The position numbers and the translations under genes are program-made. From positions 10,091,415 through 10,129,510 of the forward strand of contig NC_069007.1 in assembly GCF_001194135.2 (NCBI RefSeq): a stretch of 38,096 bases of DNA, in the 5' to 3' direction. Shown one piece after another: positions 1-38,096 of the stretch. The DNA is from Octopus bimaculoides (lineage: Eukaryota). Each line of letters starts with the position of its first letter. Position 1 is the stretch's first letter. The notes under the pieces were generated by a model, which saw only the letters and a program-made list of their open reading frames with translations, was not told the origin of the DNA and ran no database searches.

Positions 1-311
1 GGAGCACCGCCTTTAGTCGAAGGTTTGTAAGCCTAGTACTTATTTTATCGGTCTTTTTTGTTGAACCAGTAAGTTAGGGGACGTAAACACCAACATCGGT
101 TGTAAAGCTATGGTGGCAGGGGACAAACACACACAAATGCATACATTTATATATACGATGGGCTTCTTTCAGTTTCCGTCTACCAAATCCACTCACAGGG
201 CTTTGATCGGCCCGAGGCTGTAGGAGAAGACACTCACGCAAGGTGCCGCGCAGTGAGACTGAACCCAGAACCATGTGGTTGGGAAGCAAGCTTCTTACCA
301 CTCCTGCGCCT
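1..311 (-). mobile_element. tRNA-derived octopus SINE, family A (CORE-like ACCTTGGGCAAGT segment, internal microsatellite); 3' end cut by window edge
   Basis: Reverse complement begins AGGCGCAGGAGTGG..TAAGAAGCTTGCTTCCCAACCACATGGTTCTGGGTTCAGTCTCACTGCG (pol III A/B-box-like head). The same sequence recurs at 1929, 3222, 17312, 31020 and 33065. Confidence 0.85.
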
Positions 312-794
312 AGTAATTTTTGGAAAAAAATACATTGTTTTGTATTCTTCATACATTTTCTTGAAATCTTTTCTGAGGACATTTTCAAGTTTAGTGAAAA
401 TTTTAAAATGTGTATTGATGTAATTTTCCACACTGAATCTTAGCGGCTTAATTCACTTTTTTTCAGAATTTTTTTTTTTTTTTAAGTTACAACGGTTTAA
501 AGTTTGATCATTTTTACCGTCAGAAAACAGGATTTGGAAGTTGTCATTTTATGCATGATTGCACATGTTAGCAGTAACTGTGAGATGTCAATGATTTTTC
601 GAATTTTTTTCAACATCACGGTTTAAAATACGGTCAGACGTAATTTTGGGCTTAAATCCCAGCAATGGACCATTGTGTTTATGGGGAGAAAGATACCTAA
701 AAAACATCAATATGTCTGAGTGACAAACAAACGAGGACAGTGTGAGGTGATCGTGAAATGCGCTAAAAATAACAGCTAACTACCCTTTAAATCA

Positions 795-1928: not shown

Positions 1929-2297
1929 TTTGTTTCAGTCATTAGACTGCTGCCATGCTGGGACACTGCCCTGAACAATTTATTCTTTTTAGCTGAATGA
2001 ATTGATTCCAGTACCTATTTTTTTTGTTAAGCCTGATACTTATTCTATCAGTCTCTTTTGCCAAACTGCTAGGTTTCAGAGACAGAAATGAACTAACACA
2101 AGCTGTCAAGCAGTAGTGGGGGACAAACACAGAAACAAACGCACACATATATATACGATGGGCTTCTTTCAGTTTCTGTCTACCAAATCCACTCACAAGG
2201 CTTTGGTTGTCCCAAGACTATAGTAAAAGACACTTGCTCAAGGTGCCATGTAGTTGGACTAAACCCAGAACCATGTGGTTGGGAAGCAAGCTTCTCA
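1929..2297 (-). mobile_element. SINE family A, near full length
   Basis: Same blocks as 1-311 and 17312-17682 in minus orientation (TTGTTTCAGTCATT...CCATGCTGG...GGGCTTCTTTCAGTTTC...CCATGTGGTTGGGAAGCAAG). Confidence 0.85.
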
Positions 2298-3221: not shown

Positions 3222-3415
3222 ACTGGAGTGGCTGTGTGGTAAGAAGCTTGCTTACCAACCACATGGTTCCGGGTTCATTTCCAATGCCTGGCACCTTGGG
3301 TAAGTGTCTTCTACTATAGCAGTCAGACAACCAAAGCCTTATGAGTGGATTTGGTAGACTGAAACTGAAAGAAGCCCATCGTGTATATATATATATATAT
3401 ATATATGTGTGTATG

Positions 3416-3475
<60 letters not shown>

Positions 3476-4701: not shown

Positions 4702-5078
4702 TTAGAAGAAACTCTTATTTAAGATGAATGCTTGAATAACACAAAATATTAAACAAGGAATTAAAGTAGAGAAAATATGAGATGCATTGTTGAGATAATG
4801 CTTGTCATTGGTTCCTCCACCTTTTTTGCGTCTGAAGATAAAGCTTCCTGCCTTGTGTAAACATGTAACGTTCACTTGAGACCAAACGGTGCCAGGAACA
4901 CAGATTTGAATGAAACTAGCTCCCCATTCCGTACACCGAATAAATCTCGTCGGATCTGAATGAGCAAAGAAATATATTTTGAGTGCGATTGCTTCTCTTG
5001 TACACGGTGATTGGAATAAACAGTAAGATTCCACTTCGTTCCTCAGTGTGTCTTCGGATTTTCTGCATTGGTCTGGCA
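4702..5078 (-). CDS. Last coding exon of secreted lysozyme-like/chitin-binding gene: CBM14 (peritrophin-A)-like domain + hydrophobic C-terminal GPI/TM signal
   Basis: Acceptor TTTTTTTTTCTTTCCATTTCAG|TG at 5079/5078; phase 1 joins the G of exon 2 to give GTG (Val), in frame. Encodes SPCT...YFFAHSDPTRFIRCTEWGASFIQICVPGTVWSQVNVTC (C-x10-C-x12-C as in CBM14) and ends HIFSTLIPCLIFCVIQAFILNKSFF*. Confidence 0.85.
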
Positions 5079-5974: not shown

Positions 5975-6121
5975 ATACACATCAGAGATGCCTATAAAAG
6001 GACATCTGACCTGCTAGAAAGAGCAGCCAAAGCTCTACACCACAATTAGGGATAGGTGTAGAGCTTTGGCTGCTCTTTCTAGCGGGTCAGATGTCCTTTT
6101 ATAGGCATCTCTGATGTGTAT
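5975..6121. repeat. Near-perfect inverted repeat, 67-bp arms, 13-nt loop
   Basis: 5975-6041 is the reverse complement of 6055-6121 with one mismatch. The right arm runs into an N gap. Confidence 0.95.
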
Positions 6122-6355
6122 NNNNNNNNNNNNNNNNNNNNNNNNNNNNNNNNNNNNNNNNNNNNNNNNNNNNNNNNNNNNNNNNNNNNNNNNNNNNNNN
6201 NNNNNNNNNNNNNNNNNNNNNNNNNNNNNNNNNNNNNNNNNNNNNNNNNNNNNNNNNNNNNNNNNNNNNNNNNNNNNNNNNNNNNNNNNNNNNNNNNNNN
6301 NNNNNNNNNNNNNNNNNNNNNNNNNNNNNNNNNNNNNNNNNNNNNNNNNNNNNNN
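6122..6355. other. Assembly gap (N run)
   Basis: N characters. Confidence 1.
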
Positions 6356-6360
6356 ATATA

Positions 6361-6609: not shown

Positions 6610-6889
6610 CTTCTGGAATGTTAGTATTTTGTAGAAAAGTGGTGACATTTCCTTCGGGTACAATAAATTTCTTCCAATATTCTGCTTGGTCAGTCAAATT
6701 CATTGGTATAATATCATTGACAGTCAATAGATACAGGGCCATGGCGTAACCAGAATACAATGGCTTGTCCAGTTCTGAGTAATTGGCTGACGCCATTTCC
6801 ACATTGAATCTTTCTTGACCGATATTGCAGTAAGACATTAGACTTTTACCACATGCTTCTTGAACAGTTTCGAGTTGGTCGGTAGTAAC
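6610..6889 (-). CDS. Second coding exon of lysozyme-like/chitin-binding gene (C-terminal half of lysozyme-like domain)
   Basis: Acceptor AATTATTCTAG|GTT (6890/6889), donor GAAG|GTAAGA (6610/6609). 280 nt = 93 codons + 1 with no stops: VTTDQLETVQ...YSELDKPLYSGYAMALYLLTVNDIIPMNLTDQAEYWKKFIVPEGNVTTF. Phases match both neighbouring exons. Confidence 0.9.
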
Positions 6890-6915: not shown

Positions 6916-7098
6916 GGTGCTAGTGAGGTTGTGTGGTAAGAAGTTTGCTTCGCAGCCACATGGTTCTGAGTTCAGTCCCACTTTGTGAATTCTGGGGCAA
7001 GAGTCTTCTACATATAAGCCTGAACCGACGAAATCCATGTGAGTGGATTTCATAGACAGAAACTGAGAGAAACCTGTCGTGTGTGTGTGTGTCTGTGT
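6916..7098 (+). mobile_element. SINE family A, 5' half
   Basis: GTTGTGTGGTAAGAAGTTTGCTTCGCAGCCACATGGTTCTGAGTTCAGTCCCAC...GAAACCTGTCGTGTGTG. Confidence 0.8.
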
Positions 7099-7109
7099 AT
7101 ACAAATTTT

Positions 7110-7325
7110 GCTTGTTTCAATCATTAGATTGCAGCCATGCTGGGGCTATGCCTTGAAAAATTTTAGTCAAATTAATCAACCCCAGTACATTTGTTCCTAT
7201 TTTTTTTTAAGCATGGTACTTATTCTATCAGTCTTTTGCTGAACTGCTAAGTTACATGGATGTAAACTCACCATAATCGGTTGTCAAGCAATGGTGGGGG
7301 AACAAACACAGACAAAAAGACAAAA
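7110..7325 (-). mobile_element. SINE family A, 3' half
   Basis: CTTGTTTCAATCATTAGATTGCAGCCATGCTGGG...GTTGTCAAGCAATGGTGGGGGAACAAACACAG. Confidence 0.75.
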
Positions 7326-7548
7326 ACACACACACACACAAATACAACATGTGTGTGTGTGTGTGTATTGTCGTTGAATGCTCGAAATGAGGAGTAGATA
7401 GGCAGCCAACAACTGATGAAGGGTCCTTTCTCTGTGTTTACTTGTCCTGTTTTCCTTTTTCTTTTCTCATTGTTTACATATTTCATGTTATTTGCACTGC
7501 TGGTGATGTCCTGTACACATATATTCATTTATATATATATATATATAT

Positions 7549-8067
7549 NNNNNNNNNNNNNNNNNNNNNNNNNNNNNNNNNNNNNNNNNNNNNNNNNNNN
7601 NNNNNNNNNNNNNNNNNNNNNNNNNNNNNNNNNNNNNNNNNNNNNNNNNNNNNNNNNNNNNNNNNNNNNNNNNNNNNNNNNNNNNNNNNNNNNNNNNNNN
7701 NNNNNNNNNNNNNNNNNNNNNNNNNNNNNNNNNNNNNNNNNNNNNNNNNNNNNNNNNNNNNNNNNNNNNNNNNNNNNNNNNNNNNNNNNNNNNNNNNNNN
7801 NNNNNNNNNNNNNNNNNNNNNNNNNNNNNNNNNNNNNNNNNNNNNNNNNNNNNNNNNNNNNNNNNNNNNNNNNNNNNNNNNNNNNNNNNNNNNNNNNNNN
7901 NNNNNNNNNNNNNNNNNNNNNNNNNNNNNNNNNNNNNNNNNNNNNNNNNNNNNNNNNNNNNNNNNNNNNNNNNNNNNNNNNNNNNNNNNNNNNNNNNNNN
8001 NNNNNNNNNNNNNNNNNNNNNNNNNNNNNNNNNNNNNNNNNNNNNNNNNNNNNNNNNNNNNNNNNNN
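7549..8067. other. Assembly gap (N run) flanked by (TA)n
   Basis: N characters. Confidence 1.
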
Positions 8068-8826: not shown

Positions 8827-9473
8827 GCCTTTTGTTACCATATTTCTGTTGAGATGCTCTGTGTTTCTTCCAATTAATTTTAAATATAACAAAGAATTTA
8901 GTAAAATAACTTAGTTATCATAAAGCTAGTGTTAGGAACACAAATTGTGACTAAGGTTTGGTGGAAGATTTTTATTCAGAACTTATGAAAACAAGACATT
9001 TGTACTACAGAGCCAGAGGCTGTTTCAGCTGGGTTGGTATCAAAAAGGTTAAGAATTGTTTCTCTATTATATATTTTAATCCTTTTGTTACCATATTTAT
9101 GTTGAAATGCTCTGTGTTTCTTTCAATTAATTTTAGATATAACAAAGAATATAGTAGAATAACTTAGTTATCATTCAGCTAGTGTTAGGAACAAAAATTG
9201 TGACTAAGGTTTGGTGGAAGATCTTAATTCAGAACTTATGTAAATAAGACACTTGTACTACAGAGCCAGAGGTTTCAGGTGGGTGGATATCGAAAAGGTT
9301 AAGAAATTTTTCTCTATTATATATTTTAACCCTTTTGTTACCATATTTTTGTTGAGATGTTTTATGTTTCTTTCAATTAATTTTAGATATAACAAAGAAT
9401 TTAGTAAAATAACTTAGTTATCATTAAGCTAGTGTTAGGAACAAAAATTGTGACTAAGGTTTGGTGGAAGATT
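8827..9473. mobile_element. Tandem array (about 2.6 x 250 bp) of a piggyBac-like MITE plus its flank
   Basis: CCTTTTGTTACCATATTT at 8828, 9081 and 9331. Complete units end GG(A)TATC(A/G)AAAAGG|TTAA, and units 2 and 3 are preceded by TTAA, consistent with CCCTTT-type TIRs and TTAA targets. Confidence 0.65.
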
Positions 9474-9674: not shown

Positions 9675-9929
9675 CCTCCAGATGCCACCTTTATCAGGAG
9701 TGAATGGTATACCATCGTTACTTTGGACAGCCGCAAGTCTGCGGAGGAAAGAATAATCCTCCATCAAAATATTCTGAGATTTTACAAGGATCACAACAGT
9801 TTCGGCTATTTTACTGCCAACATTTCCTTCTATGAGTGTATGGTCAATGGAGAATCCTTCACAGAAAGGAACCAGGACAAGATACAATACATGGAAATAT
9901 CTGATTGTGGTAGAATGCTGCGGTGCCAT
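9675..9929 (-). CDS. First coding exon of lysozyme-like/chitin-binding gene (signal peptide + N-terminal half of lysozyme-like domain)
   Basis: First in-frame ATG at 9929 with an upstream in-frame TGA. The exon is opened by a long polypyrimidine tract + CAG| at 10053/10052; donor AGG|GTAAGG at 9675/9674 (phase 0). 85 aa: MAPQHSTTIRYFHVLYLVLVPFCEG/FSIDH...FLRRLAAVQSNDG...GGIWR. Confidence 0.88.
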
Positions 9930-15671: not shown

Positions 15672-17015
15672 ATGGAAGGCGTTAATCGTTTGGATGCTTC
15701 TGATAACACGGTTTTTAACGATGTAGATTCTGTTACACAGACATACAATGGTGAGAAACCTTTATGCGATGAAACATTTACTGATCAAAGAAATATTACG
15801 GAATATCGCTGTGATTTTTGCAGTAAAACCTTTCTTTCAGAACATGAATTATTCACACACACAGAAATACACAAGGTAAAAGTTTTCCGCTGTGATGTCT
15901 GTGGAAAATCTTTTGTTTCTAACAGTAAGTTAACAAGACACAACTTGGTCCACACGGGAGAAAAATCTTACTGTTGTGAGATATGTGGGAAATGTTTTGC
16001 CTCTAACGGCGATTTAAACAGACACAGAAGAATACACATGGGGGCAAAATCGTTCCAGTGTGACGTATGTGGGAAATCTTTTGTCTCGAATAGCGACTTA
16101 ACAAGTCATAATAGAATACATTCGGGAGGAAAGGCGTTTCACTGCGAAATATGTGGGAAATCTTTCAATTATAATTCGAAACTTGTTATCCACAGACGAA
16201 TACATACTGGAGAAAAACCGTATCACTGTGAAATATGTGGGAAATCGTTTGTCGGCAATAATTATTTGACAAGTCACAGAAGGATACATAACGAAGAAAA
16301 ACTGTTCCACTGTCAGATATGTGAAAGATCGTTCACGAAAAACTCGAACCTTGTTACCCACATTCGTAGCCATACTGGAGAAAAGCCTTTCCGCTGTGAA
16401 ATATGCGAAAAATCTTTTGTTTCTAACACCAAATTAATGACCCACAAAAGGGCGCATACTGGTGAGAAGTCCTTCCACTGTGTAATATGCGGGAAATCTT
16501 TTGTTAATAACAGTAATTTAACAAGGCATAAAATAATCCACACTGGAGAGAAGCCTTTCCACTGTGAAATATGTGGCAAATCTTTCAATTATAATTCGAA
16601 CTTTGTTGTCCACAAAAGAATACATACTGGAGAAAAACCCTATCACTGCAAAGTATGTGGAAAAGCATTTATCGATAATAGTTATTTGATCAGTCACAAA
16701 AGAATACACAACAGAGAAAAACTGTTTCATTGCGATATATGTGAAAAGTCTTTTTCTAATAATTCGAATCTTGTCATCCACAAACGAAGTCACACTGGAG
16801 AAAAACCCTATCACTGTGAGGTATGTGGGAAGTCTTACATGAATAATTCACACCTTGTCACTCACATCCGTAGCCACACTGGAGAAAAACCATACAGCTG
16901 CGAGGTCTGTGAGAAATCCTTTATCACCAACAGTCACTTAACAAGACACAAACAAATCCATACTGAACGGAAGCCTGTTAATTGCGAAACACCAGAAATC
17001 GTCTTGCAAATGTAA
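15672..17015 (+). CDS. C2H2 zinc-finger protein ZF1, 447 aa, 14 tandem fingers, single coding exon
   Basis: Uninterrupted ORF with C-x2-C-x12-H-x3-H repeats every 28 aa from finger 2 onward and TGEKP-type linkers. No recognisable N-terminal effector domain. Confidence 0.95.
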   Translation: MEGVNRLDASDNTVFNDVDSVTQTYNGEKPLCDETFTDQRNITEYRCDFCSKTFLSEHELFTHTEIHKVKVFRCDVCGKSFVSNSKLTRHNLVHTGEKSYCCEICGKCFASNGDLNRHRRIHMGAKSFQCDVCGKSFVSNSDLTSHNRIHSGGKAFHCEICGKSFNYNSKLVIHRRIHTGEKPYHCEICGKSFVGNNYLTSHRRIHNEEKLFHCQICERSFTKNSNLVTHIRSHTGEKPFRCEICEKSFVSNTKLMTHKRAHTGEKSFHCVICGKSFVNNSNLTRHKIIHTGEKPFHCEICGKSFNYNSNFVVHKRIHTGEKPYHCKVCGKAFIDNSYLISHKRIHNREKLFHCDICEKSFSNNSNLVIHKRSHTGEKPYHCEVCGKSYMNNSHLVTHIRSHTGEKPYSCEVCEKSFITNSHLTRHKQIHTERKPVNCETPEIVLQM

Positions 17016-21840: not shown

Positions 21841-22109
21841 TTTAATAAGAAATGAAAAGCAGTACTGGTGTTGTAAACACTGTGAACCACACATGCTCAA
21901 TGTGTTTTGTTTGTTTGCCAGTTGGCTGTGGTATAGTATTTGGGGGACAACTCCCTCATAGCGCTGGTTGTTAAAACACCTGAAAATCTCTCTCTCTCTC
22001 GTCTGCTACATCCCATTCATCACTACAAAATTCTGTCGGAGGTGAGTCATCTCACCTGTCTATGACTTCCAGGTGTTTTAACACACACCATGATGAGAGA
22101 ATCATCTCC

Positions 22110-22640
22110 CCAAGTGCTTTCTCTCTCTATCACTTCCTCTCTCTCTCTCTTCCCCTCTCTCTCTTCTCTCCTCTCTCTTCCCCTCTTTGTCTCCCCATCT
22201 CTCTCTCTTCTCTTTGTTTCCCCATCTCTTTCTCTTTTTCTCCTCTTTCTCATTCTCCCTCTTCCCATCTTTGTCTCCCCATCTCTCTCTATCTCTTCCT
22301 CTCTCTCTATTTCTCTCTCCTCTCTCTTCCCCTCTTTGTCTCCCCATCTCTCTCCTGCTACACCCCATTCTTATCTATTATCATTCCTCAATGCCTTCTC
22401 ATTTCTGCCATCATGCCCCTCTCACTGTTGCTCCCTTTTATCCCTTTTATATCCCAACATCTCTCTCTCTACCACCCCTACACCTTGCCCATCATCCTGC
22501 TACTCCCTGACCTACTCTCCTCTCTGAACCATTCCCTATATCTCCCACCCTGCCCCCTCAACTGCACCTCCACCTTTGTTCATCACTCACAATATTTACC
22601 TCCACCTCCATCTGTTACTCCCCCTCACACCCTATGAAAG
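22110..22640. repeat. Polypyrimidine/polypurine low-complexity tract with (CT)n and repeated CTCTTCCCCTCTTTGTCTCCCCATCT units
   Basis: Direct reading. Units occur near 22172, 22261 and 22322; the tract continues as C-rich sequence to about 22640. Confidence 0.9.
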
Positions 22641-23460
22641 CATCCACTCTTCTCTCTCATTAGAGAACAGCAGACATCATCAATTTATGTTTAAAAAATT
22701 TCTTAATTGTACGGCCATCAATAACCGATGTCCGTGTGTCTAATTCGTTAAAGTGACCCTTTAAGTAAACGAAAATGGCTCTTATCAAAGGGAGAGATAA
22801 AATCGCAAATTGGAGATTTATACAGCGAAATTTTTTTCTGATTTTCCTTCATCATCAGATGGGGTTGATGTTGGTGATGGTGACGTTCTAGATGGCATAG
22901 AAAAAAAGTGATGCTTCAACTATTTCTGGATAGAAAAACTGTCCCGGTTAAAACTGTCCCGGTTTTTCTTCATTTGCAAATTGGTTTCACAAAAACAATA
23001 CGTGAGAATCTCAAATGAATTTATGCTCCTGCTGCATGTAAAGGTGAATATTTTACGACACTTTTGGAGAATGACATTGTAAATTTTATGGTGCGAGAGA
23101 CTAACAATTAGTTTTTGTATTTGTTGAAAGAGAAAATAAATATTAAAAGAATTTCCCTTAAGAAAAAGATTTAAAAATTTTTTTCGCTTATTTGACATTC
23201 CTGCCGTTTAAGGTTGAGTTTCAAAGTAGAGTTATTTCCCCTGTCCGCTAATTGCTAAATCCAATTTATTCTGTTATTTCCTGCTTTTGTTTCATACACA
23301 TCTGCATTACTTGATCAGTTCCACTTTACAACTGACATTTAATAGGATCCAATTAAATTTACATGATTGGTAATTAACAGTGTAAAATAATAGGTTCAGC
23401 ATTCTTTATTATGTTGAACTGAAAAATATAAATCAACGTTTGTTGACTCTTTTGAAGCTG

Positions 23461-25744: not shown

Positions 25745-27124
25745 ATGTCAAAATTGGTAGGAAAATCTTCATATAATTGCAATGTCTGTAAAAAATCATT
25801 CTCCCAAAAACATGGTCTTACTGAACACAAGCGAATTCATACAGGAGAAAAACCATTTTATTGTGGTATCTGTGGTAAATCATTTTCAAAAAACGATCAC
25901 CTTACTAAACATATACGCATCCATACAGGGGACAAACCATATCACTGTGATATCTGTGGTAGATCATTTTCTTGTACAAGTAGCTTAACTAGTCACAAAC
26001 GTACTCATACAGGAGACAAACCATATCACTGTGATATCTGTGGAAAATCATTCTCTGAAGGAAGTGCTGTCACTATACATAAACGCATTCATACAGGAGA
26101 GAAACCATATCGCTGTGACGTCTGTGGTAAATCCTTTTCTCAAGGAAACCATTTAACTACACACAAGTATATTCATACTGGGAAGAAACCATATCACTGT
26201 GATATCTGTGGTAAATCATTTTCTCATAAAGTTGTTCTACAAACACATAAGTTTATTCATACAGGAGAAAAACCATATCAGTGCAGTATCTGTGGCAAAT
26301 CCTTCTCTCTTATGAATCACTTGACTAATCACAAACAGATTCATACTGAGGGGAACCCTTGTGCCTGTGACATCTGTGGTAAATCATTCTCTCAAATAAA
26401 TCACTTAACTAAACACAAATACATTCACACAGGAGACAAACCATATCACTGTGATATCTGTAATAGATCATTTTCTTTAAATCGTTACTTAACTAGGCAC
26501 AAGTTTACTCATACTGGAGAAAAGCCATACATCTGTAATATCTGTGGTAAGTCATTCTCTCATACAAGCAGCTTAACTAAACACAAAATTATTCATACAG
26601 GAGAAAAGCCATATCCTTGTGATATTTGTGGTGTGTCATTCTCTCATATGACTAGCTTAACTAACCACAAACGGATTCATACAGGAGAGAAGCCATTTCA
26701 CTGTGATATCTGTGGTAAATCATTTGCTCAAGGAGGTAGCTTAGCTCAACACAAATGCATTCATACAGGAGAAAAACCATATTACTGTGATATCTGTGGC
26801 AAGTCGTTCTTTCGACAACATTACTTAACTGTACACAAGTATATTCATACAGGAGAGAAACCATACCACTGTGATATCTGTGGTAAATCATTCTCTTATA
26901 AAGGTAACTTAACTCAACACAATCGTATTCATACAGGAGAGAAACCATATCGCTGTGATATCTGTGGTAAATCGTTCTCTCATACAAGTACCTTAACTCA
27001 ACATCAACACATTCATACAGGAGAGAAACAACATTGCTGTGATATTTGTGGCAAGTCATTCTCTGTTGTGGGTAGCTTAACTAAACATAAGCGAATTCAC
27101 AGAAGAAAAACCATTCCATTGTGA
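25745..27124 (+). CDS. C2H2 zinc-finger protein ZF2, 459 aa, 16 tandem fingers
   Basis: Uninterrupted ORF of 28-aa C2H2 units with TGEKP linkers. It ends via a frameshift in the last linker (RRKTIPL*). AATAAA at 27513. Confidence 0.93.
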
Positions 27125-30417: not shown

Positions 30418-30689
30418 NNNNNNNNNNNNNNNNNNNNNNNNNNNNNNNNNNNNNNNNNNNNNNNNNNNNNNNNNNNNNNNNNNNNNNNNNNNNNNNNNNN
30501 NNNNNNNNNNNNNNNNNNNNNNNNNNNNNNNNNNNNNNNNNNNNNNNNNNNNNNNNNNNNNNNNNNNNNNNNNNNNNNNNNNNNNNNNNNNNNNNNNNNN
30601 NNNNNNNNNNNNNNNNNNNNNNNNNNNNNNNNNNNNNNNNNNNNNNNNNNNNNNNNNNNNNNNNNNNNNNNNNNNNNNNNNNNNNNNNN
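30418..30689. other. Assembly gap (N run)
   Basis: N characters. Confidence 1.
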
Positions 30690-31019
30690 ACGATGAAATA
30701 TTTTCTTTCGTGTTTTGTACAATTGTTTGAAATGTTAAAAAGTGATGTTCTCATTTTTCAATGGCAATACATTTCTCAGCTTTTTATCTGCAATAAAATT
30801 TTCCTCCTGAAAATATATTACACAGAATCATGTTTGTTCATTATTCTGACATCCATTTTTCTATACTTTGCATGGATCAGATGGAGTTTTGATGAAGATT
30901 CTCTACAGCAGAATGCCTTTCTTGTGGTCATTCCTCACTTGTTCCCAAGTAATATTTCCTCATGGCCAGACATTTGGAAATAAATAACACTGCTTGTGTG
31001 AGGGTAATATCAAGACAAG

Positions 31020-31950: not shown

Positions 31951-32610
31951 TTAAGAAACAATAGACAATGATTTACTGCAGGTGTTGCAGTGATATGGCT
32001 TCTCTCCTGTATGGGTGAGTTTGTGTCTTTTTAAGCTACTTGTCTGAGAGAATGATTTACCACAGATATCACATTTAAAAGGTCTGATTCCTGAATGGCT
32101 ACGCTTATGTTTAGTTAAGGTACTTCCTTCAGAGAACGATTTACCACAGACATCACAGTGATATGGCTTCTCTCCTGTATGAATGTTCTTATGTGCTGTT
32201 AAGTGACTCTTTTGAAAAAATGATTTAGTGCAGACATCACAGTGAAATAGCTTCTCTCCCGTATGAAAGTACTTGTGTTCGGTTAAGTGACATTTTTGAT
32301 AGAATGTTTTGCCACAAATATCACAAAGATATGGTTTTTCTCCGGTATGTGTACGTTTGTGAGTTGTCAAGTGACTTCCTTCAGAGAATGATCTGCCACA
32401 GACATCACAGTGATATGGTTTCTCACCTGTATGTACGCGTATGTGTGTAACTAAGTAGTTATTTTGAGAGAAAGTTTTACCGCAAATATCACAGCGATGT
32501 GGCTTTGCTACTTTGGGAGTTCGTTTGGGAGCTGAGACGTAATCTCTTTGAGAGGATGGCTTTTCACAGATATCACTACTGTCTGTTGATTTCCCTGTCT
32601 CTTCTGCCAT
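31951..32610 (-). CDS. C2H2 zinc-finger protein ZF3, 219 aa, 6 intact fingers plus degenerate N-terminal and truncated C-terminal fingers
   Basis: ORF with C2H2 repeats and TGEKP linkers. The N-terminal DSSDICEKPSSQRDYVSAPKRTP is a finger that lost its Zn ligands. The last finger stops at CNTCSKSLSIVS*. Confidence 0.88.
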   Translation of the reverse strand: MAEETGKSTDSSDICEKPSSQRDYVSAPKRTPKVAKPHRCDICGKTFSQNNYLVTHIRVHTGEKPYHCDVCGRSFSEGSHLTTHKRTHTGEKPYLCDICGKTFYQKCHLTEHKYFHTGEKLFHCDVCTKSFFQKSHLTAHKNIHTGEKPYHCDVCGKSFSEGSTLTKHKRSHSGIRPFKCDICGKSFSQTSSLKRHKLTHTGEKPYHCNTCSKSLSIVS

Positions 32611-35241: not shown

Positions 35242-35552
35242 GGAGGCGCAATGGCCCAGTGGTTAGGGCAGCGGACTCGCGGTCATAGGATCGCGGTTTC
35301 GATTCCCAGACCGGCGTTGTGAGTGTTTATTGAGCGAAAACACCTAAAAGCTCCACGAGGCTCCGGCAGGGGATGGTGACGAACCCAGCTGTACTCTTTC
35401 ACCACAACTTTCTCTCACTCTTTCTTCCTGTTTCTGTTGTACCTGTAATTCAAAGGGTCAGCCTTGTCACACTGTGTCACGCTGGATATCCCCGAGAACT
35501 ACGTTAAGGGTACACGTGTCTGTGGAGTGCCCAGCCACTTGCACGTTAATTT
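35242..35552 (+). mobile_element. tRNA-head SINE family C, truncated by gap
   Basis: GGAGGCGCAATGGCCCAGTGGTTAGGGCAGCGGACTCGCGGTCATAGGATCGCGGTTTCGATTCCC (A and B boxes). The body matches the reverse complement of 31468-31847. Confidence 0.92.
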
Positions 35553-36002
35553 NNNNNNNNNNNNNNNNNNNNNNNNNNNNNNNNNNNNNNNNNNNNNNNN
35601 NNNNNNNNNNNNNNNNNNNNNNNNNNNNNNNNNNNNNNNNNNNNNNNNNNNNNNNNNNNNNNNNNNNNNNNNNNNNNNNNNNNNNNNNNNNNNNNNNNNN
35701 NNNNNNNNNNNNNNNNNNNNNNNNNNNNNNNNNNNNNNNNNNNNNNNNNNNNNNNNNNNNNNNNNNNNNNNNNNNNNNNNNNNNNNNNNNNNNNNNNNNN
35801 NNNNNNNNNNNNNNNNNNNNNNNNNNNNNNNNNNNNNNNNNNNNNNNNNNNNNNNNNNNNNNNNNNNNNNNNNNNNNNNNNNNNNNNNNNNNNNNNNNNN
35901 NNNNNNNNNNNNNNNNNNNNNNNNNNNNNNNNNNNNNNNNNNNNNNNNNNNNNNNNNNNNNNNNNNNNNNNNNNNNNNNNNNNNNNNNNNNNNNNNNNNN
36001 NN
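35553..36002. other. Assembly gap (N run)
   Basis: N characters. Confidence 1.
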
Positions 36003-36034
<32 letters not shown>

Positions 36035-36248: not shown

Positions 36249-38096
36249 TTATTTAAATGTTAATTCAATCCTTCTCTCTTTCTTGTTGAAATTGTTGATA
36301 ACATCATTGTAGAAGGTATCGTTCTTAATGCTTTTTAAAACGGCTTTTTCTATGCCAATTAGAGCTAAACTGCTCGACCTTTCTTGTCCCTGCGAATTTC
36401 TCGTATAACTATGAATTCTGTTTAGGTATGAAGAAGAGCGCTCCACTGTAGCACTTATTGTTGGTAGTGTTAATATTAATTCACAAAGCTTCGTTAACTG
36501 GGGCAAAGCTTCATCTAATCCACTATTACGCAGGATGTAAAGTAAATCTTGAATGGATTTTCCTTTTAGTTCAGCATCTTTGTACAGGGCAGTAAGTTCG
36601 CTTCTTAACTTTTGGCTGTCGAAATGGTCTTCATAGGTATGTTTAAGACAAGTTAGAGATGTTTCCTGGACGTTGTTACTTTGTCTCATTGGATCGAGAA
36701 GCGCTAAAAAATGTAATTCATTTAAATTTTGAAATCTTATCTCAATGTGCTCGCAAATTAAATCTATAATTTTGTAGAACAGCTGTCTGTATCTTTCTTC
36801 TTCTGTTTCAAAAGCAGTTTTTCTTTTCTTTATTTGAGGATAAATGCCATCAACGTTAGCCCAAAATTTAGAAAATTCTTGCTTTTTTTCTTTCAAAACT
36901 TTCACAATTTCATTTACTGTATGAATACAGTAGAATACGTCAAATGTATTTTCCTGGAGGATGTCAAATGCTGTATTTGTGTAAATAAAAATATCTCCAA
37001 ACACATTTAACAAAAAATTGAATTCACAATTTTGTAAATTAGAATACAACGACTGAGCATAGGTATAGCTTTCCGTGTCCCATCTACTTGAATTATCAAT
37101 GATGTTTAGGAATAAATCAGCAAGTTGCTCATGATATTCACGAACTGTTTCTACCAAAGAATGATTCAAGTTCCAGCGAGTTGGCGTCACTTTTGGAAAA
37201 CGCTTTTTAATTTCAGTATCTAGATGCACGCGTTTGGTCGACTTACAAAAAAATAACGAAAAAGACTTTATCTGTGAAAAAAACTTATCGCATTCTTGAA
37301 TATTTGCAGCCGCTTGAGACAGAACTAGATTTAATCTATGGGCCATACAATGAACAAAAAAAGCATGAGGATACTTTTCTTTAACTTTCTTTTGCAAACC
37401 ATTTAATTCACTTGGCATCACACTTGCACCATCATAAGTATGAGCCACAAACTTATGGCCAATTTTTAACTCTTCTATTTTATCGAACACAATTTTTGAC
37501 AAACCACTTGCCGTACGATCAAAACTTACATTTAAAAATCCTAAAAATCTTTCTGCAATATTACCGTCACTTAAAACATATCTTATAACAAATGAAAGCT
37601 GTGCTCCAGTTCTAATTTCAGTTGCTTCATCTAAAATGATAGCCACAAATGTTGAATCGTTAATTTCCGATTTAATCTTTTCTAAAAGAACTTCAGCCAC
37701 GCTATTTATTAAATCATTTTGAAATCTGTTTGAAGTGCCAGAAAAAACGCCTTCCTCTTGCAAATTTGATAATATAGGATCGTATTTCTTACAGAGGTGG
37801 AGTATTTCTACGTAATTGCCCTCATTATCAAAATCAGCTGATTCATCATGACCTCTGAATGCTAGTTGTTGTTCACTTAAAAAACAAACTACATCAATTA
37901 ATCGTCTTAAGATCTCCCTATTTTTCTTTACTTTTTCATTATGAGTTTCAATATTCTTTTGATGTTGGCTGTTTAATAAAAAATCAATACGCGTTTTTCC
38001 GAATCTTGTTAAATCAATCACTGATGTTAAATGAGAAGTAGATAGCTCGTGTCTTTTAATGGCTTTATGCAAATTATTTAAATCAGAAAATCCATA
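36249..38096 (-). CDS. hAT-superfamily transposase / ZMYM1-like protein (DUF4371-type + hAT dimerisation domain), at least 615 aa, 5' end outside window
   Basis: The frame is open to the window edge: the ORF-track start at 38072 is TTG, preceded in frame by YGFSDLNN. Motifs HE.S..H (TTF-type Zn finger end), LAFRGHDE, IILDEAT (D), YDGASVM (D), CMAHRLNL (CxxH), PTRW and TVERSSS (E). Confidence 0.9.
   Translation of the reverse strand, partial: YGFSDLNNLHKAIKRHELSTSHLTSVIDLTRFGKTRIDFLLNSQHQKNIETHNEKVKKNREILRRLIDVVCFLSEQQLAFRGHDESADFDNEGNYVEILHLCKKYDPILSNLQEEGVFSGTSNRFQNDLINSVAEVLLEKIKSEINDSTFVAIILDEATEIRTGAQLSFVIRYVLSDGNIAERFLGFLNVSFDRTASGLSKIVFDKIEELKIGHKFVAHTYDGASVMPSELNGLQKKVKEKYPHAFFVHCMAHRLNLVLSQAAANIQECDKFFSQIKSFSLFFCKSTKRVHLDTEIKKRFPKVTPTRWNLNHSLVETVREYHEQLADLFLNIIDNSSRWDTESYTYAQSLYSNLQNCEFNFLLNVFGDIFIYTNTAFDILQENTFDVFYCIHTVNEIVKVLKEKKQEFSKFWANVDGIYPQIKKRKTAFETEEERYRQLFYKIIDLICEHIEIRFQNLNELHFLALLDPMRQSNNVQETSLTCLKHTYEDHFDSQKLRSELTALYKDAELKGKSIQDLLYILRNSGLDEALPQLTKLCELILTLPTISATVERSSSYLNRIHSYTRNSQGQERSSSLALIGIEKAVLKSIKNDTFYNDVINNFNKKERRIELTFK

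What the first reader, a model, noticed from the sequence alone, without database searches (positions are those of the whole stretch)
9675..9740. Both lysozyme/SLT catalytic signature positions are substituted (ES to QS, GxxQ to GIWR): likely pseudoenzyme
In lysozyme-fold and lytic transglycosylase enzymes, the catalytic Glu ends a helix (xxES) and is followed by a G-x-x-Q motif. Here the sequence reads AVQS (codon CAA at 9725-9723) and GGIWR (9677-9675), while the reading frame and the rest of the motif stay intact. That pattern suggests conversion from hydrolase to glycan-binding lectin or receptor. The residue identities are seen in the sequence; the equivalence to catalytic positions is inferred.
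Basis: partly seen in the sequence, partly recalled or inferred. Interest (0 to 1): 0.72.

Follow-up and report, generated by a model that had tools for sequence, protein, structure and literature searches.

The report
Octopus lysozyme-like protein lacking catalytic glutamate
An octopus gene encodes a surface-tethered, chitin-binding protein whose main domain is an unrecognised animal relative of phage cell-wall-lysing enzymes that has lost its key catalytic glutamate yet stays strongly conserved, so it probably binds sugar polymers instead of cutting them.

Summary
Q69 (CAA 9725-9723) and R85 (AGG 9677-9675) lie in exon 1 of an intact three-exon minus-strand gene (9929-9675, 6889-6610, 5078-4705; 302 aa). 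The protein has a signal peptide, a ~155-aa N-domain, a CBM14-like chitin-binding module and a C-terminal hydrophobic tail. The N-domain matches no Pfam, NCBIfam or PDB sequence. It belongs to a large unnamed metazoan family (600 hits) that is homologous to phage family phrog_3108, which sits next to holins and spanins in lysis cassettes. Confident AlphaFold models find lytic transglycosylases (MltE, phiKZ gp144, Slt70) and lysozymes as nearest solved folds, at sub-threshold E-values. The Q69 column is Glu in 77% of animal copies and 7/7 phage proteins, and it aligns to goose lysozyme E73. The R85 column is Gln in 7/7 phage proteins but only about 40% of animal copies, so it is weak evidence. 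A third position (T87, aligned to D97) is also changed. Q/R/T is fixed in Octopus sinensis and Argonauta orthologs, every labelled cephalopod copy lacks the Glu, and N-domain dN/dS is 0.10. A conserved non-catalytic glycan-binding protein is the best reading. No activity has been tested for any family member.

The parts
9675..9929 (-). Exon 1 (codons 1-85): start ATG, signal peptide (aa 1-24, 9929-9858) and the first part of the N-domain including both flagged motifs
   Evidence: ORF and gtaagg donor. 94.9% identical, ungapped, to O. sinensis exon 1 with the same donor.
9723..9725 (-). Codon CAA = Gln69, at the column that is Glu in 77% of family copies and in 7/7 phage homologs. It aligns to goose lysozyme E73.
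9675..9677 (-). Codon AGG = Arg85, the last residue of the invariant G-G-I-W-x motif. The column is Gln in 7/7 phage homologs but variable in animals.
6884..6886 (-). Codon for Thr87 (second codon of exon 2). The column is Asp/Glu in 7/7 phage homologs and Asp in about 43% of animal copies. It aligns to goose lysozyme D97.
   Evidence: Coordinates derived from the gene model.
6610..6889 (-). Exon 2 (codons 86-178 plus the first base of codon 179): the rest of the lysozyme-like N-domain, including the PLYSG and QAEYWKK motifs
   Evidence: AG acceptor and gtaaga donor. P0001 spans the junction. O. sinensis has the same boundaries.
4705..5078 (-). Exon 3 (codons 179-302 plus stop TAA 4707-4705): linker, CBM14-like module, basic/Gly linker and hydrophobic tail
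4852..5022 (-). CBM14-like (peritrophin-A type) chitin-binding module, aa 198-254, with Cys 198, 204, 227, 238, 251
   Evidence: Pfam PF01607 E 0.0011, 19.5 bits, below the 22.1 cutoff. It aligns to repeats that pass the cutoff in paralogs P0202 (E 1.5e-14) and P0003 (E 8e-37). dN/dS 0.054.
4708..4785 (-). C-terminal hydrophobic segment (aa 277-302) running to the end of the protein: candidate GPI-attachment signal or membrane anchor
   Evidence: Hydropathy scan. Predicted helix 277-300. The Argonauta ortholog also ends in a hydrophobic tail, while paralogs P0202 and P0005 do not.

Best explanation
The finding lies in a functional three-exon octopus gene for a secreted protein, probably GPI- or membrane-tethered. 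The protein is built from a lysozyme-fold N-domain and one peritrophin-type chitin-binding module. The N-domain belongs to an unnamed metazoan family that shares ancestry with phage proteins occupying the endolysin position of lysis cassettes (phrog_3108). The ancestral active-site pattern is a helix ending in Glu-Ser/Thr, a hairpin, then G-[LIV]-x-Gln-x-Asp/Glu, which is the same layout as goose lysozyme E73...Q95-V-D97 and the motifs of lytic transglycosylases. In this gene all three positions are changed (Gln69, Arg85, Thr87), while every other family-invariant residue, including the aromatic Trp84, Tyr130 and Trp157, is kept. Without the general-acid carboxylate the domain most likely cannot cleave a beta-1,4 GlcNAc/MurNAc glycosidic bond, but it can still hold the glycan in its groove. 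Together with the CBM14 module it would act as a non-catalytic binder of chitin or peptidoglycan at the cell surface, as a lectin, receptor or matrix organiser. Shown here: the gene structure, the substitutions, their fixation, purifying selection, homology to the phage family, and the phage lysis-cassette context. Inferred: the lysozyme-type mechanism of the Glu-bearing relatives, loss of activity, the ligand, and membrane tethering.
For: Gene model and residues. Family: 600 hits at E<=1e-3 and 159 at <=1e-10; Glu at the Q69 column in 98/127 copies, with E/Q/D the commonest triad. Phage homology: 27/38 family members hit phrog_3108, best E 3.7e-19; tblastn finds 118 phage records, best E 7e-19; 406 IMG/VR contigs. 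Lysis context: in PSA28 the homolog is followed by a LydA holin (PF16083 E 1e-11, phrog_785 E 1e-25) and an Rz-like spanin (phrog_89 E 1.7e-8); in phiKO2 a 3-TM holin-like gp53 precedes gp54 downstream of the late promoter; five holin PHROGs occur among 44 immediate neighbours in de-duplicated IMG/VR loci. Fold: AlphaFold pLDDT 92.7, pTM 0.89, with a helix ending at S70, a hairpin, then the next helix. Foldseek PDB top hits are MltE (E 0.03, prob 0.99), phiKZ gp144 (prob 0.96, rmsd 4.8 A over 146 columns), Slt70, MltF, hen lysozymes and a GH23 chitinase. BFVD gives a phage protein at TM 0.82, E 5.6e-5, then a putative endolysin and an SLT-domain protein. The only PDB sequences found by the family profile are goose and swan lysozyme, with E73 and GLMQVD aligned. 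hhalign gives E 3.5e-4 and score 31 against a maximum of 18 for 20 shuffled templates. Fixation: O. sinensis and Argonauta orthologs share Q/R/T. dN/dS is 0.103 for the N-domain and 0.054 for the CBM. Family-invariant residues are kept. All labelled cephalopod copies are Glu-less and form one NJ clade.
Against: No curated lysozyme, SLT or glucosaminidase model matches any of 38 family members, even at E<=10. No Foldseek PDB hit reaches E<=0.001, and TM-scores to solved enzymes are 0.3-0.5. hhalign probability is only 37%, and with the deep animal-dominated profile the signal falls within the range of shuffled controls. The window's own domain does not hit phrog_3108 directly, so homology is transitive through the animal family. 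No member of either the animal or the phage family has a measured activity, and in some phages the gene sits by baseplate genes rather than holins. Many Glu-bearing animal copies vary at the Gln and Asp columns, so animal members may not be conventional muramidases at all. CBM14 is below Pfam's cutoff in this protein.
Confidence: 0.55

Rival explanations
1. The animal N-domain is not an enzyme module in any member. After acquisition or divergence from the phage-type lysin it became a structural or protein-interaction module of extracellular matrix proteins (with VWA and CBM14 domains). The conserved Glu would then be structural or ligand-binding, and Q69 would be a tolerated variant rather than a switch from enzyme to lectin.
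For: Most relatives carry matrix-type partners such as VWA and CBM14 repeats, and sources name them collagen- or matrilin-like. The Gln and Asp columns are poorly conserved even in Glu-bearing copies. About 23% of copies in several phyla lack the Glu. Animal-specific invariant residues (D58, R64) are absent from the phage proteins. No curated enzyme family matches.
Against: Glu is still kept in 77% of copies across phyla and in 7/7 phage proteins, which is more than expected for a dispensable residue. E/Q/D is the single commonest triad. The Glu column aligns to the catalytic Glu of goose lysozyme.
Confidence: 0.22
2. The octopus protein is still an active glycoside hydrolase or lyase. It would use a different acid (for example Asp79, Asp72 or Asp58) or substrate-assisted chemistry, so Q69 changes specificity or pH optimum rather than abolishing catalysis.
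For: An ortholog-specific Asp79 lies in the hairpin between Q69 and GGIW. Asp58 and Asp72 are conserved family acids. Strong purifying selection on the domain fits any retained function. The best early PDB neighbours include a GH23 chitinase.
Against: Three aligned active-site positions are changed together (Q/R/T), and other cephalopod clade members carry Arg, a positive charge, at the Glu column. From general knowledge of the GH22, GH23 and GH73 families, Glu-to-Gln at the general acid inactivates the enzyme. The PDB hit list itself contains E-to-Q variants: one entry is titled 'inactive mutant E503Q' (Slt), and the GH23 chitinase E141Q and E162Q entries carry no activity statement in their titles.
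Confidence: 0.12
3. The sequence is a decaying pseudogene, a mis-assembled region or a sequencing error, and the substitutions have no functional meaning.
For: The window has several N-gaps and many repeats. The window's own protein is in the database only as a 142-aa fragment.
Against: The frame is intact over three exons with canonical splice sites. The O. sinensis exon structure is identical and its annotated 303-aa product matches. dN/dS is 0.15 overall and 0.10 in the domain. The Argonauta ortholog has the same residues.
Confidence: 0.02

Closest known systems
GH23 lysozyme-like enzymes: goose-type lysozyme (153L) and lytic transglycosylases (E. coli MltE and Slt70, phage phiKZ gp144)
   Same: The best solved structural neighbours are MltE, gp144 and Slt70. 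The order of elements is the same: a helix ending in Glu-Ser, a hairpin, then G-L-x-Q-V-D. The family profile aligns its Glu to E73 and its Q-V-D to Q95-V-D97 of goose lysozyme.
   Different: No curated model matches. All structural E-values are above 0.001 and TM-scores are 0.3-0.5. The model is almost all-helical with only a minimal hairpin. The AYNAG-type third motif is not recognisable in the octopus protein. The octopus protein lacks the Glu, the Gln and the Asp.
Phage family phrog_3108 (e.g. Klebsiella phage phiKO2 Gp54, Pseudomonas phage PSA28 QVJ13210), function unannotated
   Same: It is homologous to the animal family (27/38 members, best E 3.7e-19; tblastn E down to 7e-19). Size is about 150-165 aa. 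It shares the motifs A-x-x-E-[ST], G-[LIV]-x-Q-x-[DE] and YWKK. BFVD structural match has TM 0.82.
   Different: The phage proteins are cytoplasmic single-domain proteins next to holins and spanins, or domains of 800-1000-aa virion proteins. They keep Glu, Gln and the acid in 7/7 cases. The octopus protein has a signal peptide, a CBM14 module and a membrane tail, lacks all three residues, and does not hit the PHROG model directly.
Catalytically dead members of glycan-hydrolase folds: alpha-lactalbumin and sperm SLLP1/SPACA3 (C-type lysozyme fold), chi-lectins and insect IDGFs (GH18 with the catalytic Glu replaced, Gln in IDGFs), non-amidase PGRPs. These examples come from general knowledge and were not tested here.
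   Same: The logic is the same: an intact fold and binding groove, replacement of the catalytic acid, purifying selection, and reuse as a binding, receptor or signalling protein.
   Different: The fold family and evolutionary origin differ. Here the parent family itself is uncharacterised, and the dead version is fused to a chitin-binding module and a membrane anchor.
Enc34-type all-helical phage endolysins (PHA02564; PMC8943055)
   Same: This is also a phage endolysin family with no recognisable sequence similarity to known lysins. It has an all-helical lysozyme alpha-lobe-like fold, and its structural neighbours are TM0633 (4qdn), phiKZ gp144 (3bkh) and MltC. 4qdn and 3bkh appear in my hit lists.
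   Different: The Enc34 core is circularly permuted, with its catalytic Glu131 on a late helix. In the family here the Glu is on an early helix, in the GH23 order. The family profiles found no Enc34-type chain by sequence at E<=10, and no Enc34-type structure appears in the listed Foldseek rows.
Mollusc Pif/BMSP-type matrix proteins (VWA + CBM14; PMC11291548)
   Same: Relatives of the octopus protein have N-domain + VWA + CBM14 repeats, the same partner domains as Pif/BMSP family proteins.
   Different: The Pif/BMSP survey classifies proteins by Pfam domains and mentions no lysozyme-like N-terminal module. The window protein has no VWA domain, and octopods have no mineralised shell. Whether the two sets overlap was not tested.

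Membership tests
Lysozyme-like / SLT (Pfam PF01464 and related; CAZy GH23) | Significant match to a curated family model | tested here: not met
   No lysozyme, SLT or glucosaminidase Pfam hit for the window protein at E<=10, for 10 relatives, or for 38 family members. No NCBIfam hit. The PDB profile search found nothing with the animal profile and only E about 0.9 to goose lysozyme with the phage+animal profile.
Lysozyme-like / SLT (GH23) | Lysozyme-type fold with the catalytic residue at the C-terminal end of a helix, followed by a hairpin and the G-x-x-Q helix | tested here: inconclusive
   The confident model (pLDDT 92.7) has helix 59-70 ending at Q69-S70, hairpin 77-86, then helix 88-98. 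The top Foldseek PDB hits are MltE, gp144, Slt70 and HEWL with prob up to 0.99, but E is 0.03-5 and TM 0.3-0.5. No residue-level superposition was possible.
Lysozyme-like / SLT (GH23) | Catalytic Glu (motif E-S) | tested here: not met
   The window has Gln69-Ser70. The Glu is present in 98/127 family copies and 7/7 phage homologs.
Lysozyme-like / SLT (GH23) | Motif G-L-x-Q (and the following Asp in goose-type lysozymes) | tested here: not met
   The window has G-I-W-R-V-T. Phage homologs have Q and D/E in 7/7. Animal copies have Q in about 40% and D in about 43%.
Lysozyme-like / SLT (GH23) | Muramidase, lytic-transglycosylase or chitinase activity | not testable with these tools
   This needs biochemical assays. 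No paper on this family was found.
Phage phrog_3108 | Significant match to the PHROG profile | tested here: not met
   The window's domain has no PHROG hit at E<=1, but 27 of 38 animal relatives match (best E 3.7e-19). Membership of the wider homologous superfamily therefore holds only transitively.
Phage phrog_3108 | Location beside holin or spanin genes (endolysin slot) | tested here: not met
   This does not apply to a spliced animal gene flanked by zinc-finger genes. It is met for phage members PSA28 and phiKO2 and for several IMG/VR loci.
Unnamed metazoan N-domain family (alone, in tandem, or with VWA/CBM14) | Significant sequence similarity over the whole ~155-aa domain | tested here: met
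   phmmer E 1e-37 to 1e-11 against many members, covering aa ~15-185. 25-38% identity.
Unnamed metazoan N-domain family | Family-invariant residues (G38, D58, R64, A66, G73, G81-G82-I83-W84, P128, S131, Q153, W157) | tested here: met
   All are kept in the window, O. sinensis and Argonauta orthologs. Only V41 and V42 are changed, conservatively.
CBM_14 (peritrophin-A chitin-binding domain, PF01607) | Match above Pfam's gathering score | tested here: not met
   19.5 bits against a cutoff of 22.1, E 0.0011, aa 215-254. The orthologs are similar.
CBM_14 | Homology to bona fide CBM14 repeats with the conserved Cys/aromatic pattern | tested here: met
   It aligns column by column (PCT.E...FYFAHPDP.KFIQCTEWG...C.PGTVWSQ...TC) with repeats of P0202 (E 1.5e-14) and P0005, and P0003 scores E 8e-37. 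A weak PDB hit to a dust-mite CBM14 allergen.
CBM_14 | Chitin binding | not testable with these tools
   This needs a pull-down with insoluble chitin.
Pseudoenzyme (operational definition) | Homolog of enzymes, lacking an essential catalytic residue, maintained by selection, lacking activity | tested here: inconclusive
   The missing residue and selection are met. The enzymatic nature of relatives is only inferred from phage lysis-cassette context and fold. Lack of activity is not testable here.

The most novel reading that the evidence does not exclude
A phage endolysin-type lysozyme-fold domain (phrog_3108) entered, or was inherited by, early animals. It founded a previously unrecognised metazoan family of secreted glycan-active proteins found in molluscs, annelids, echinoderms, mites, tunicates and fish. 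In cephalopods the whole clade lost the catalytic Glu in one event and diversified. One branch, which includes this gene, became a GPI-tethered cell-surface sensor for chitin or peptidoglycan, in effect a new class of pattern-recognition receptor analogous to non-catalytic PGRPs.
Probability: 0.2. Interest if true: 0.8.

Novelty: new variant of a known kind. Interest (0 to 1): 0.6.

Why it matters
Dead versions of sugar-cutting enzymes reused as lectins, receptors or growth factors are a known theme. Examples are alpha-lactalbumin, chi-lectins and non-catalytic PGRPs. Here the parent family itself appears to be undescribed. It is a broadly distributed animal domain with no Pfam or NCBIfam model, its members are named only as uncharacterised, collagen-like or matrilin-like, and it is homologous to an unannotated phage family found in the endolysin slot of lysis cassettes.

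If the inference holds, it does three things:
- It assigns a likely function (cell-wall lysin) to a phage family found in at least 406 viral contigs.
- It defines a new animal lysozyme-like family, often fused to chitin-binding and VWA domains.
- It gives a clean natural experiment, with Glu-bearing and Glu-less branches and an apparently all-dead cephalopod clade, for studying how a hydrolase becomes a binding protein.

It also flags a candidate chitin or peptidoglycan sensor in cephalopods.

Tried and rejected
- **Sequence searches of the window protein.** Pfam on exon 1 alone and on the full protein found nothing for the N-domain. PDB sequence searches with the single protein and with the animal-only profile also found nothing.
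- **NCBIfam.** A scan of phage and animal members gave only chance hits.
- **Pfam at E<=10 on 38 members.** No recurring weak lysozyme or SLT hit.
- **First Foldseek run.** The truncated 142-aa model gave no interpretable top hits, only low-probability GH23 chitinase and GH73 matches. The full-domain model was needed.
- **Deep-profile hhalign against goose lysozyme.** It gave the same alignment but no significance (E 0.16 and 0.038; scores within the shuffled range). I therefore do not claim sequence-level GH23 membership.
- **Structure prediction with my spliced sub-sequence.** I used the identical fragment P0001 and the ortholog P0002 instead.
- **Model coordinates.** They are not exposed to scripts, so I could not check residue-level superposition or look for neighbouring carboxylates.
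- **Enc34-type endolysin family.** Considered and rejected as the same family because its core is permuted.
- **Pif/BMSP identity.** Considered but not established.
- **Pseudogene or assembly-artefact reading.** Rejected on dN/dS and ortholog evidence.
- **Literature searches.** Searches for the family, for phrog_3108 and for a phiKO2 endolysin gave nothing specific.
- **Paralogous exons in the window.** None found.
Full report
**1. What is at the coordinates**

The window is eukaryotic. It has low GC, microsatellites, assembly gaps, several C2H2 zinc-finger ORFs and a hAT-transposase-like ORF.

On the minus strand an ORF starts at ATG 9929 and reads MAPQHST...FLRRLAAVQSNDGIPFTPDKGGIWR. It is followed directly by a gtaagg donor.

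A database protein, P0001 (142 aa), is identical to the window and continues into a second exon. With canonical AG/GT sites the gene has three exons:

| Exon | Coordinates (minus strand) |
|---|---|
| 1 | 9929-9675 |
| 2 | 6889-6610 |
| 3 | 5078-4705 (stop TAA 4707-4705) |

This gives 302 codons. The Octopus sinensis locus has the same three exons and splice sites, and its CDS translates exactly to 'uncharacterized protein LOC118768355' (P0002, 94% identical).

**2. Anatomy of the protein**

| Residues | Feature | Evidence |
|---|---|---|
| 1-24 | Hydrophobic signal-peptide-like leader | |
| 25-178 | N-domain carrying the flagged residues | |
| 198-254 | Cysteine-rich module, CBM_14 just below Pfam's cutoff (19.5 vs 22.1 bits, E 0.0011) | |
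| 257-276 | Basic/glycine linker | |
| 277-302 | Hydrophobic segment running to the C-terminus | |

The cysteine-rich module aligns column by column with CBM14 repeats that pass the cutoff in cephalopod paralogs. The hydrophobic C-terminal tail is shared by the Argonauta ortholog but absent from the paralogs. It looks like a GPI signal or membrane anchor, which is an inference.

**3. The N-domain belongs to a large, unnamed family**

Pfam, NCBIfam and PDB sequence searches find nothing for this domain.

An exhaustive phmmer search finds 600 relatives at E<=1e-3 and 159 at E<=1e-10. The domain occurs alone in ~190-aa secreted proteins, in two or three tandem copies, or ahead of VWA and CBM14 domains.

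Labelled members come from cephalopods, gastropods, bivalves, an annelid, a starfish, mites, a tunicate and a teleost. All are named uncharacterised, or collagen- or matrilin-like.

The family motif is D-x3-L-R-R-x-A-[YF]-V-E-[ST]-x-D-G ... G-G-I-W-x-V-x. Key columns in the 127-copy set, which includes the 7 phage proteins:

| Column (window residue) | Residues across the family |
|---|---|
| Q69 | Glu in 98 of 127 copies |
| R85 | Variable: Q about 40%, then A, R, G, N, K |
| T87 | Asp in about 43% |

**4. Link to phage lysis proteins**

- A Foldseek search of the viral structure library gave a strong match to a 1021-aa uncultured Caudovirales protein (E 5.6e-5, TM 0.82, rmsd 2.5 A, 24% identity). 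It also gave three ~150-aa phage proteins (TM 0.61-0.65), then a 'putative endolysin' and an 'SLT domain' protein.
- By sequence, 27 of 38 family members hit phrog_3108, function unknown, with best E 3.7e-19.
- tblastn finds the domain in 118 phage records, and a pattern scan finds it in at least 406 IMG/VR contigs.
- In Pseudomonas phage PSA28 the homolog is followed directly by a LydA-type holin and an Rz-like spanin.
- In Klebsiella phage phiKO2, Gp54 follows a three-TM holin-like Gp53 just downstream of the late promoter. A published survey lists phiKO2 as having a two-component spanin.
- One record annotates the homolog as endolysin.
- Among 44 immediate neighbours from de-duplicated IMG/VR loci, the recurrent annotated functions are holins (five PHROG families) and tail proteins.
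- In four of those loci the domain is embedded in 794-888-aa proteins, as virion-associated lysins often are.
- In Vibrio and Shewanella phages it instead follows a baseplate gene, with no obvious holin.

All seven phage proteins that I aligned keep Glu, Gln and an acid at the three columns: A-x-x-E-[ST] ... G-[LIV]-x-Q-x-[DE]. The window protein is the only row lacking them.

**5. Is it a lysozyme/SLT fold?**

AlphaFold models are confident for the domain (pLDDT 92.7, pTM 0.89; >90 over aa 30-175 in the full-length ortholog). They show a helix ending at Q69-S70, a short hairpin containing GGIWR, then the next helix.

Against solved structures, the full-domain model's best hits are almost all lysozyme-superfamily enzymes:

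| Hit | Foldseek result |
|---|---|
| E. coli MltE | E 0.03-0.08, prob 0.97-0.99 |
| phiKZ gp144 | prob 0.96, rmsd 4.8 A over 146 columns |
| Slt70, P. aeruginosa Slt, MltF, many hen lysozymes, Ralstonia GH23 chitinase | lower probabilities |

No hit reaches E<=0.001, and TM-scores are 0.3-0.5.

A profile of phage plus animal sequences, searched against all PDB sequences, returns only goose and black-swan lysozyme (E about 0.9). The family Glu aligns to E73 and G-l-w-Q-V-D aligns to G-L-M-Q-V-D97.

hhalign gives the same alignment with E 3.5e-4 but probability 37%. Its score is 31, against a maximum of 18 for 20 shuffled templates, 11 for the reversed template and 13 for T4 lysozyme. With the deep animal-dominated profile the signal is lost.

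No member gives even a weak hit to a curated SLT or lysozyme model.

My reading is that the fold and motif layout are those of the GH23-type branch of the lysozyme superfamily, with moderate confidence. Formal family membership is not met. A published precedent exists for all-helical, sequence-orphan phage endolysins whose neighbours are the same structures (TM0633, gp144, MltC). That family is circularly permuted and is different from this one.

**6. Is the loss of Glu real, fixed and meaningful?**

- The O. sinensis ortholog and a 69-74% identical Argonauta hians ortholog both read VQS...GGIWRVTT.
- dN/dS between the window and O. sinensis is 0.15 overall, 0.10 in the N-domain and 0.05 in the CBM14 region, at dS about 0.19.
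- The three orthologs keep essentially every family-invariant residue: G38, D58, R64, A66, G73, GGIW, P128, S131, Q153, W157.
- Octopus and Argonauta paralogs carry Arg or Gln at the Glu column.
- All ten labelled cephalopod members I saw are Glu-less. The eight of them in the tree, plus one unlabelled sequence, form a compact neighbour-joining clade of 9 of 129 tips. This suggests one loss followed by duplication. The tree has no bootstrap, and sampling is biased toward the query's neighbours.
- Glu-less copies also occur in a tunicate, an oyster and a scallop, so loss is recurrent.
- An ortholog-specific Asp79 in the hairpin loop could not be evaluated spatially.

**7. Mechanism proposed**

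The ancestral domain most likely cleaves the beta-1,4 bond of peptidoglycan, or of chitin in animal copies fused to CBM14, using the helix-end Glu as general acid. This is inferred from fold, motifs and lysis-cassette context.

In this gene the Glu is an amide, the motif Gln is Arg and the following acid is Thr, while the aromatic groove residues remain. The protein would therefore bind a GlcNAc-containing polymer without cutting it, and present it at the cell surface together with a CBM14 module.

Rival readings are that the animal domain is a non-enzymatic matrix module in all members, that the octopus protein is still active through another acid, or that the gene is a pseudogene. They are weighed in the Rival explanations section. 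The last is effectively excluded.

**8. Novelty and verdict**

The pseudoenzyme theme is well known. New here are three things:
- An apparently undescribed metazoan lysozyme-like domain family.
- Its homology to an unannotated phage family found in the endolysin slot.
- An apparently all-Glu-less cephalopod clade that includes a membrane-tethered, chitin-binding member.

I found no paper describing any of this, but the library searched is incomplete.

It is right about the fold class, the Glu and the probable loss of catalysis. It overstates the second position, and it rests on enzymatic activity that nobody has measured for this family.

Noticed in passing
window 36249-38072 (-): A 607-aa ORF with DUF4371 (E 3e-16) and a hAT-family dimerisation domain (E 2e-5). 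It is a hAT-type transposase remnant or domesticated copy (ZMYM1-like).
   Followed up: partly
window 15672-17015 (+), 25745-27124 (+), 31951-32610 (-): Three long single-exon ORFs made of tandem C2H2 zinc fingers (Pfam E down to 1e-123). The lysozyme-like gene sits at the edge of a zinc-finger gene cluster.
   Followed up: partly
window ~6120-6360, ~7520-8060, ~30420-30700, ~35550-36010: Runs of N (assembly gaps) flanked by TA/CA-type microsatellites. Two of them lie inside introns 1 and 2 of the gene, so intron content is incomplete.
   Followed up: no
window 8958-9167 and 9253-9417 (+), inside intron 1: Two adjacent stretches give nearly the same ORF text (...YYRARG...FSIIYFNPFVTIF.L.C..FLSINFRYNKE...). 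This indicates a tandemly duplicated repeat element.
   Followed up: no
window 74-433 (-), 1942-2196 (-), 3341-3472 (+), 7039-7242 (+): The ORF text 'MSGFGRxKLKEAHRxY' recurs on both strands. This indicates a dispersed SINE-like repeat family.
   Followed up: no
window 22001-23000: Strong strand asymmetry (GC skew -0.51, AT skew -0.26) from a CT-rich low-complexity tract that gives Ser/Leu/Pro-rich pseudo-ORFs at 22062-22637.
   Followed up: no
L004 2842-3453 (LR756504.1, 'uncultured phage', 636 kb): It encodes the closest non-animal homolog of the animal family (40.5% identity, E 7e-19; motif MTETKLGTDPNT...GRGVWQIDE). It lies between ribonucleotide-reductase-like and topoisomerase-II-like ORFs. 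In the NJ tree the seven viral sequences did not form one clade. This could be a jumbo phage or giant virus, and a possible bridge for gene transfer.
   Followed up: partly
L045, L057, L063, L074 (IMG/VR contigs); BFVD A0A6J5QT34: In some phages the domain is part of a 794-1021-aa protein rather than a ~160-aa stand-alone protein. This suggests a virion-associated cell-wall-degrading module.
   Followed up: no
L005 2260-3318 and L006 2200-3249 (Vibrio phage 1.055.O, Shewanella phage 1/44): Here the homolog follows a baseplate gene. It is flanked by a 70-aa non-membrane ORF and a DUF1353 (PF07087) protein, with no holin-like neighbour. The lysis-cassette context is therefore not universal.
   Followed up: partly
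window 6644-6649 (-), codons 166-167: The database fragment P0001 stops at ...VPEGN, exactly before a GT (aat|gtc). An alternative or mis-predicted splice donor inside exon 2 may therefore exist in another annotation of this gene.
   Followed up: no
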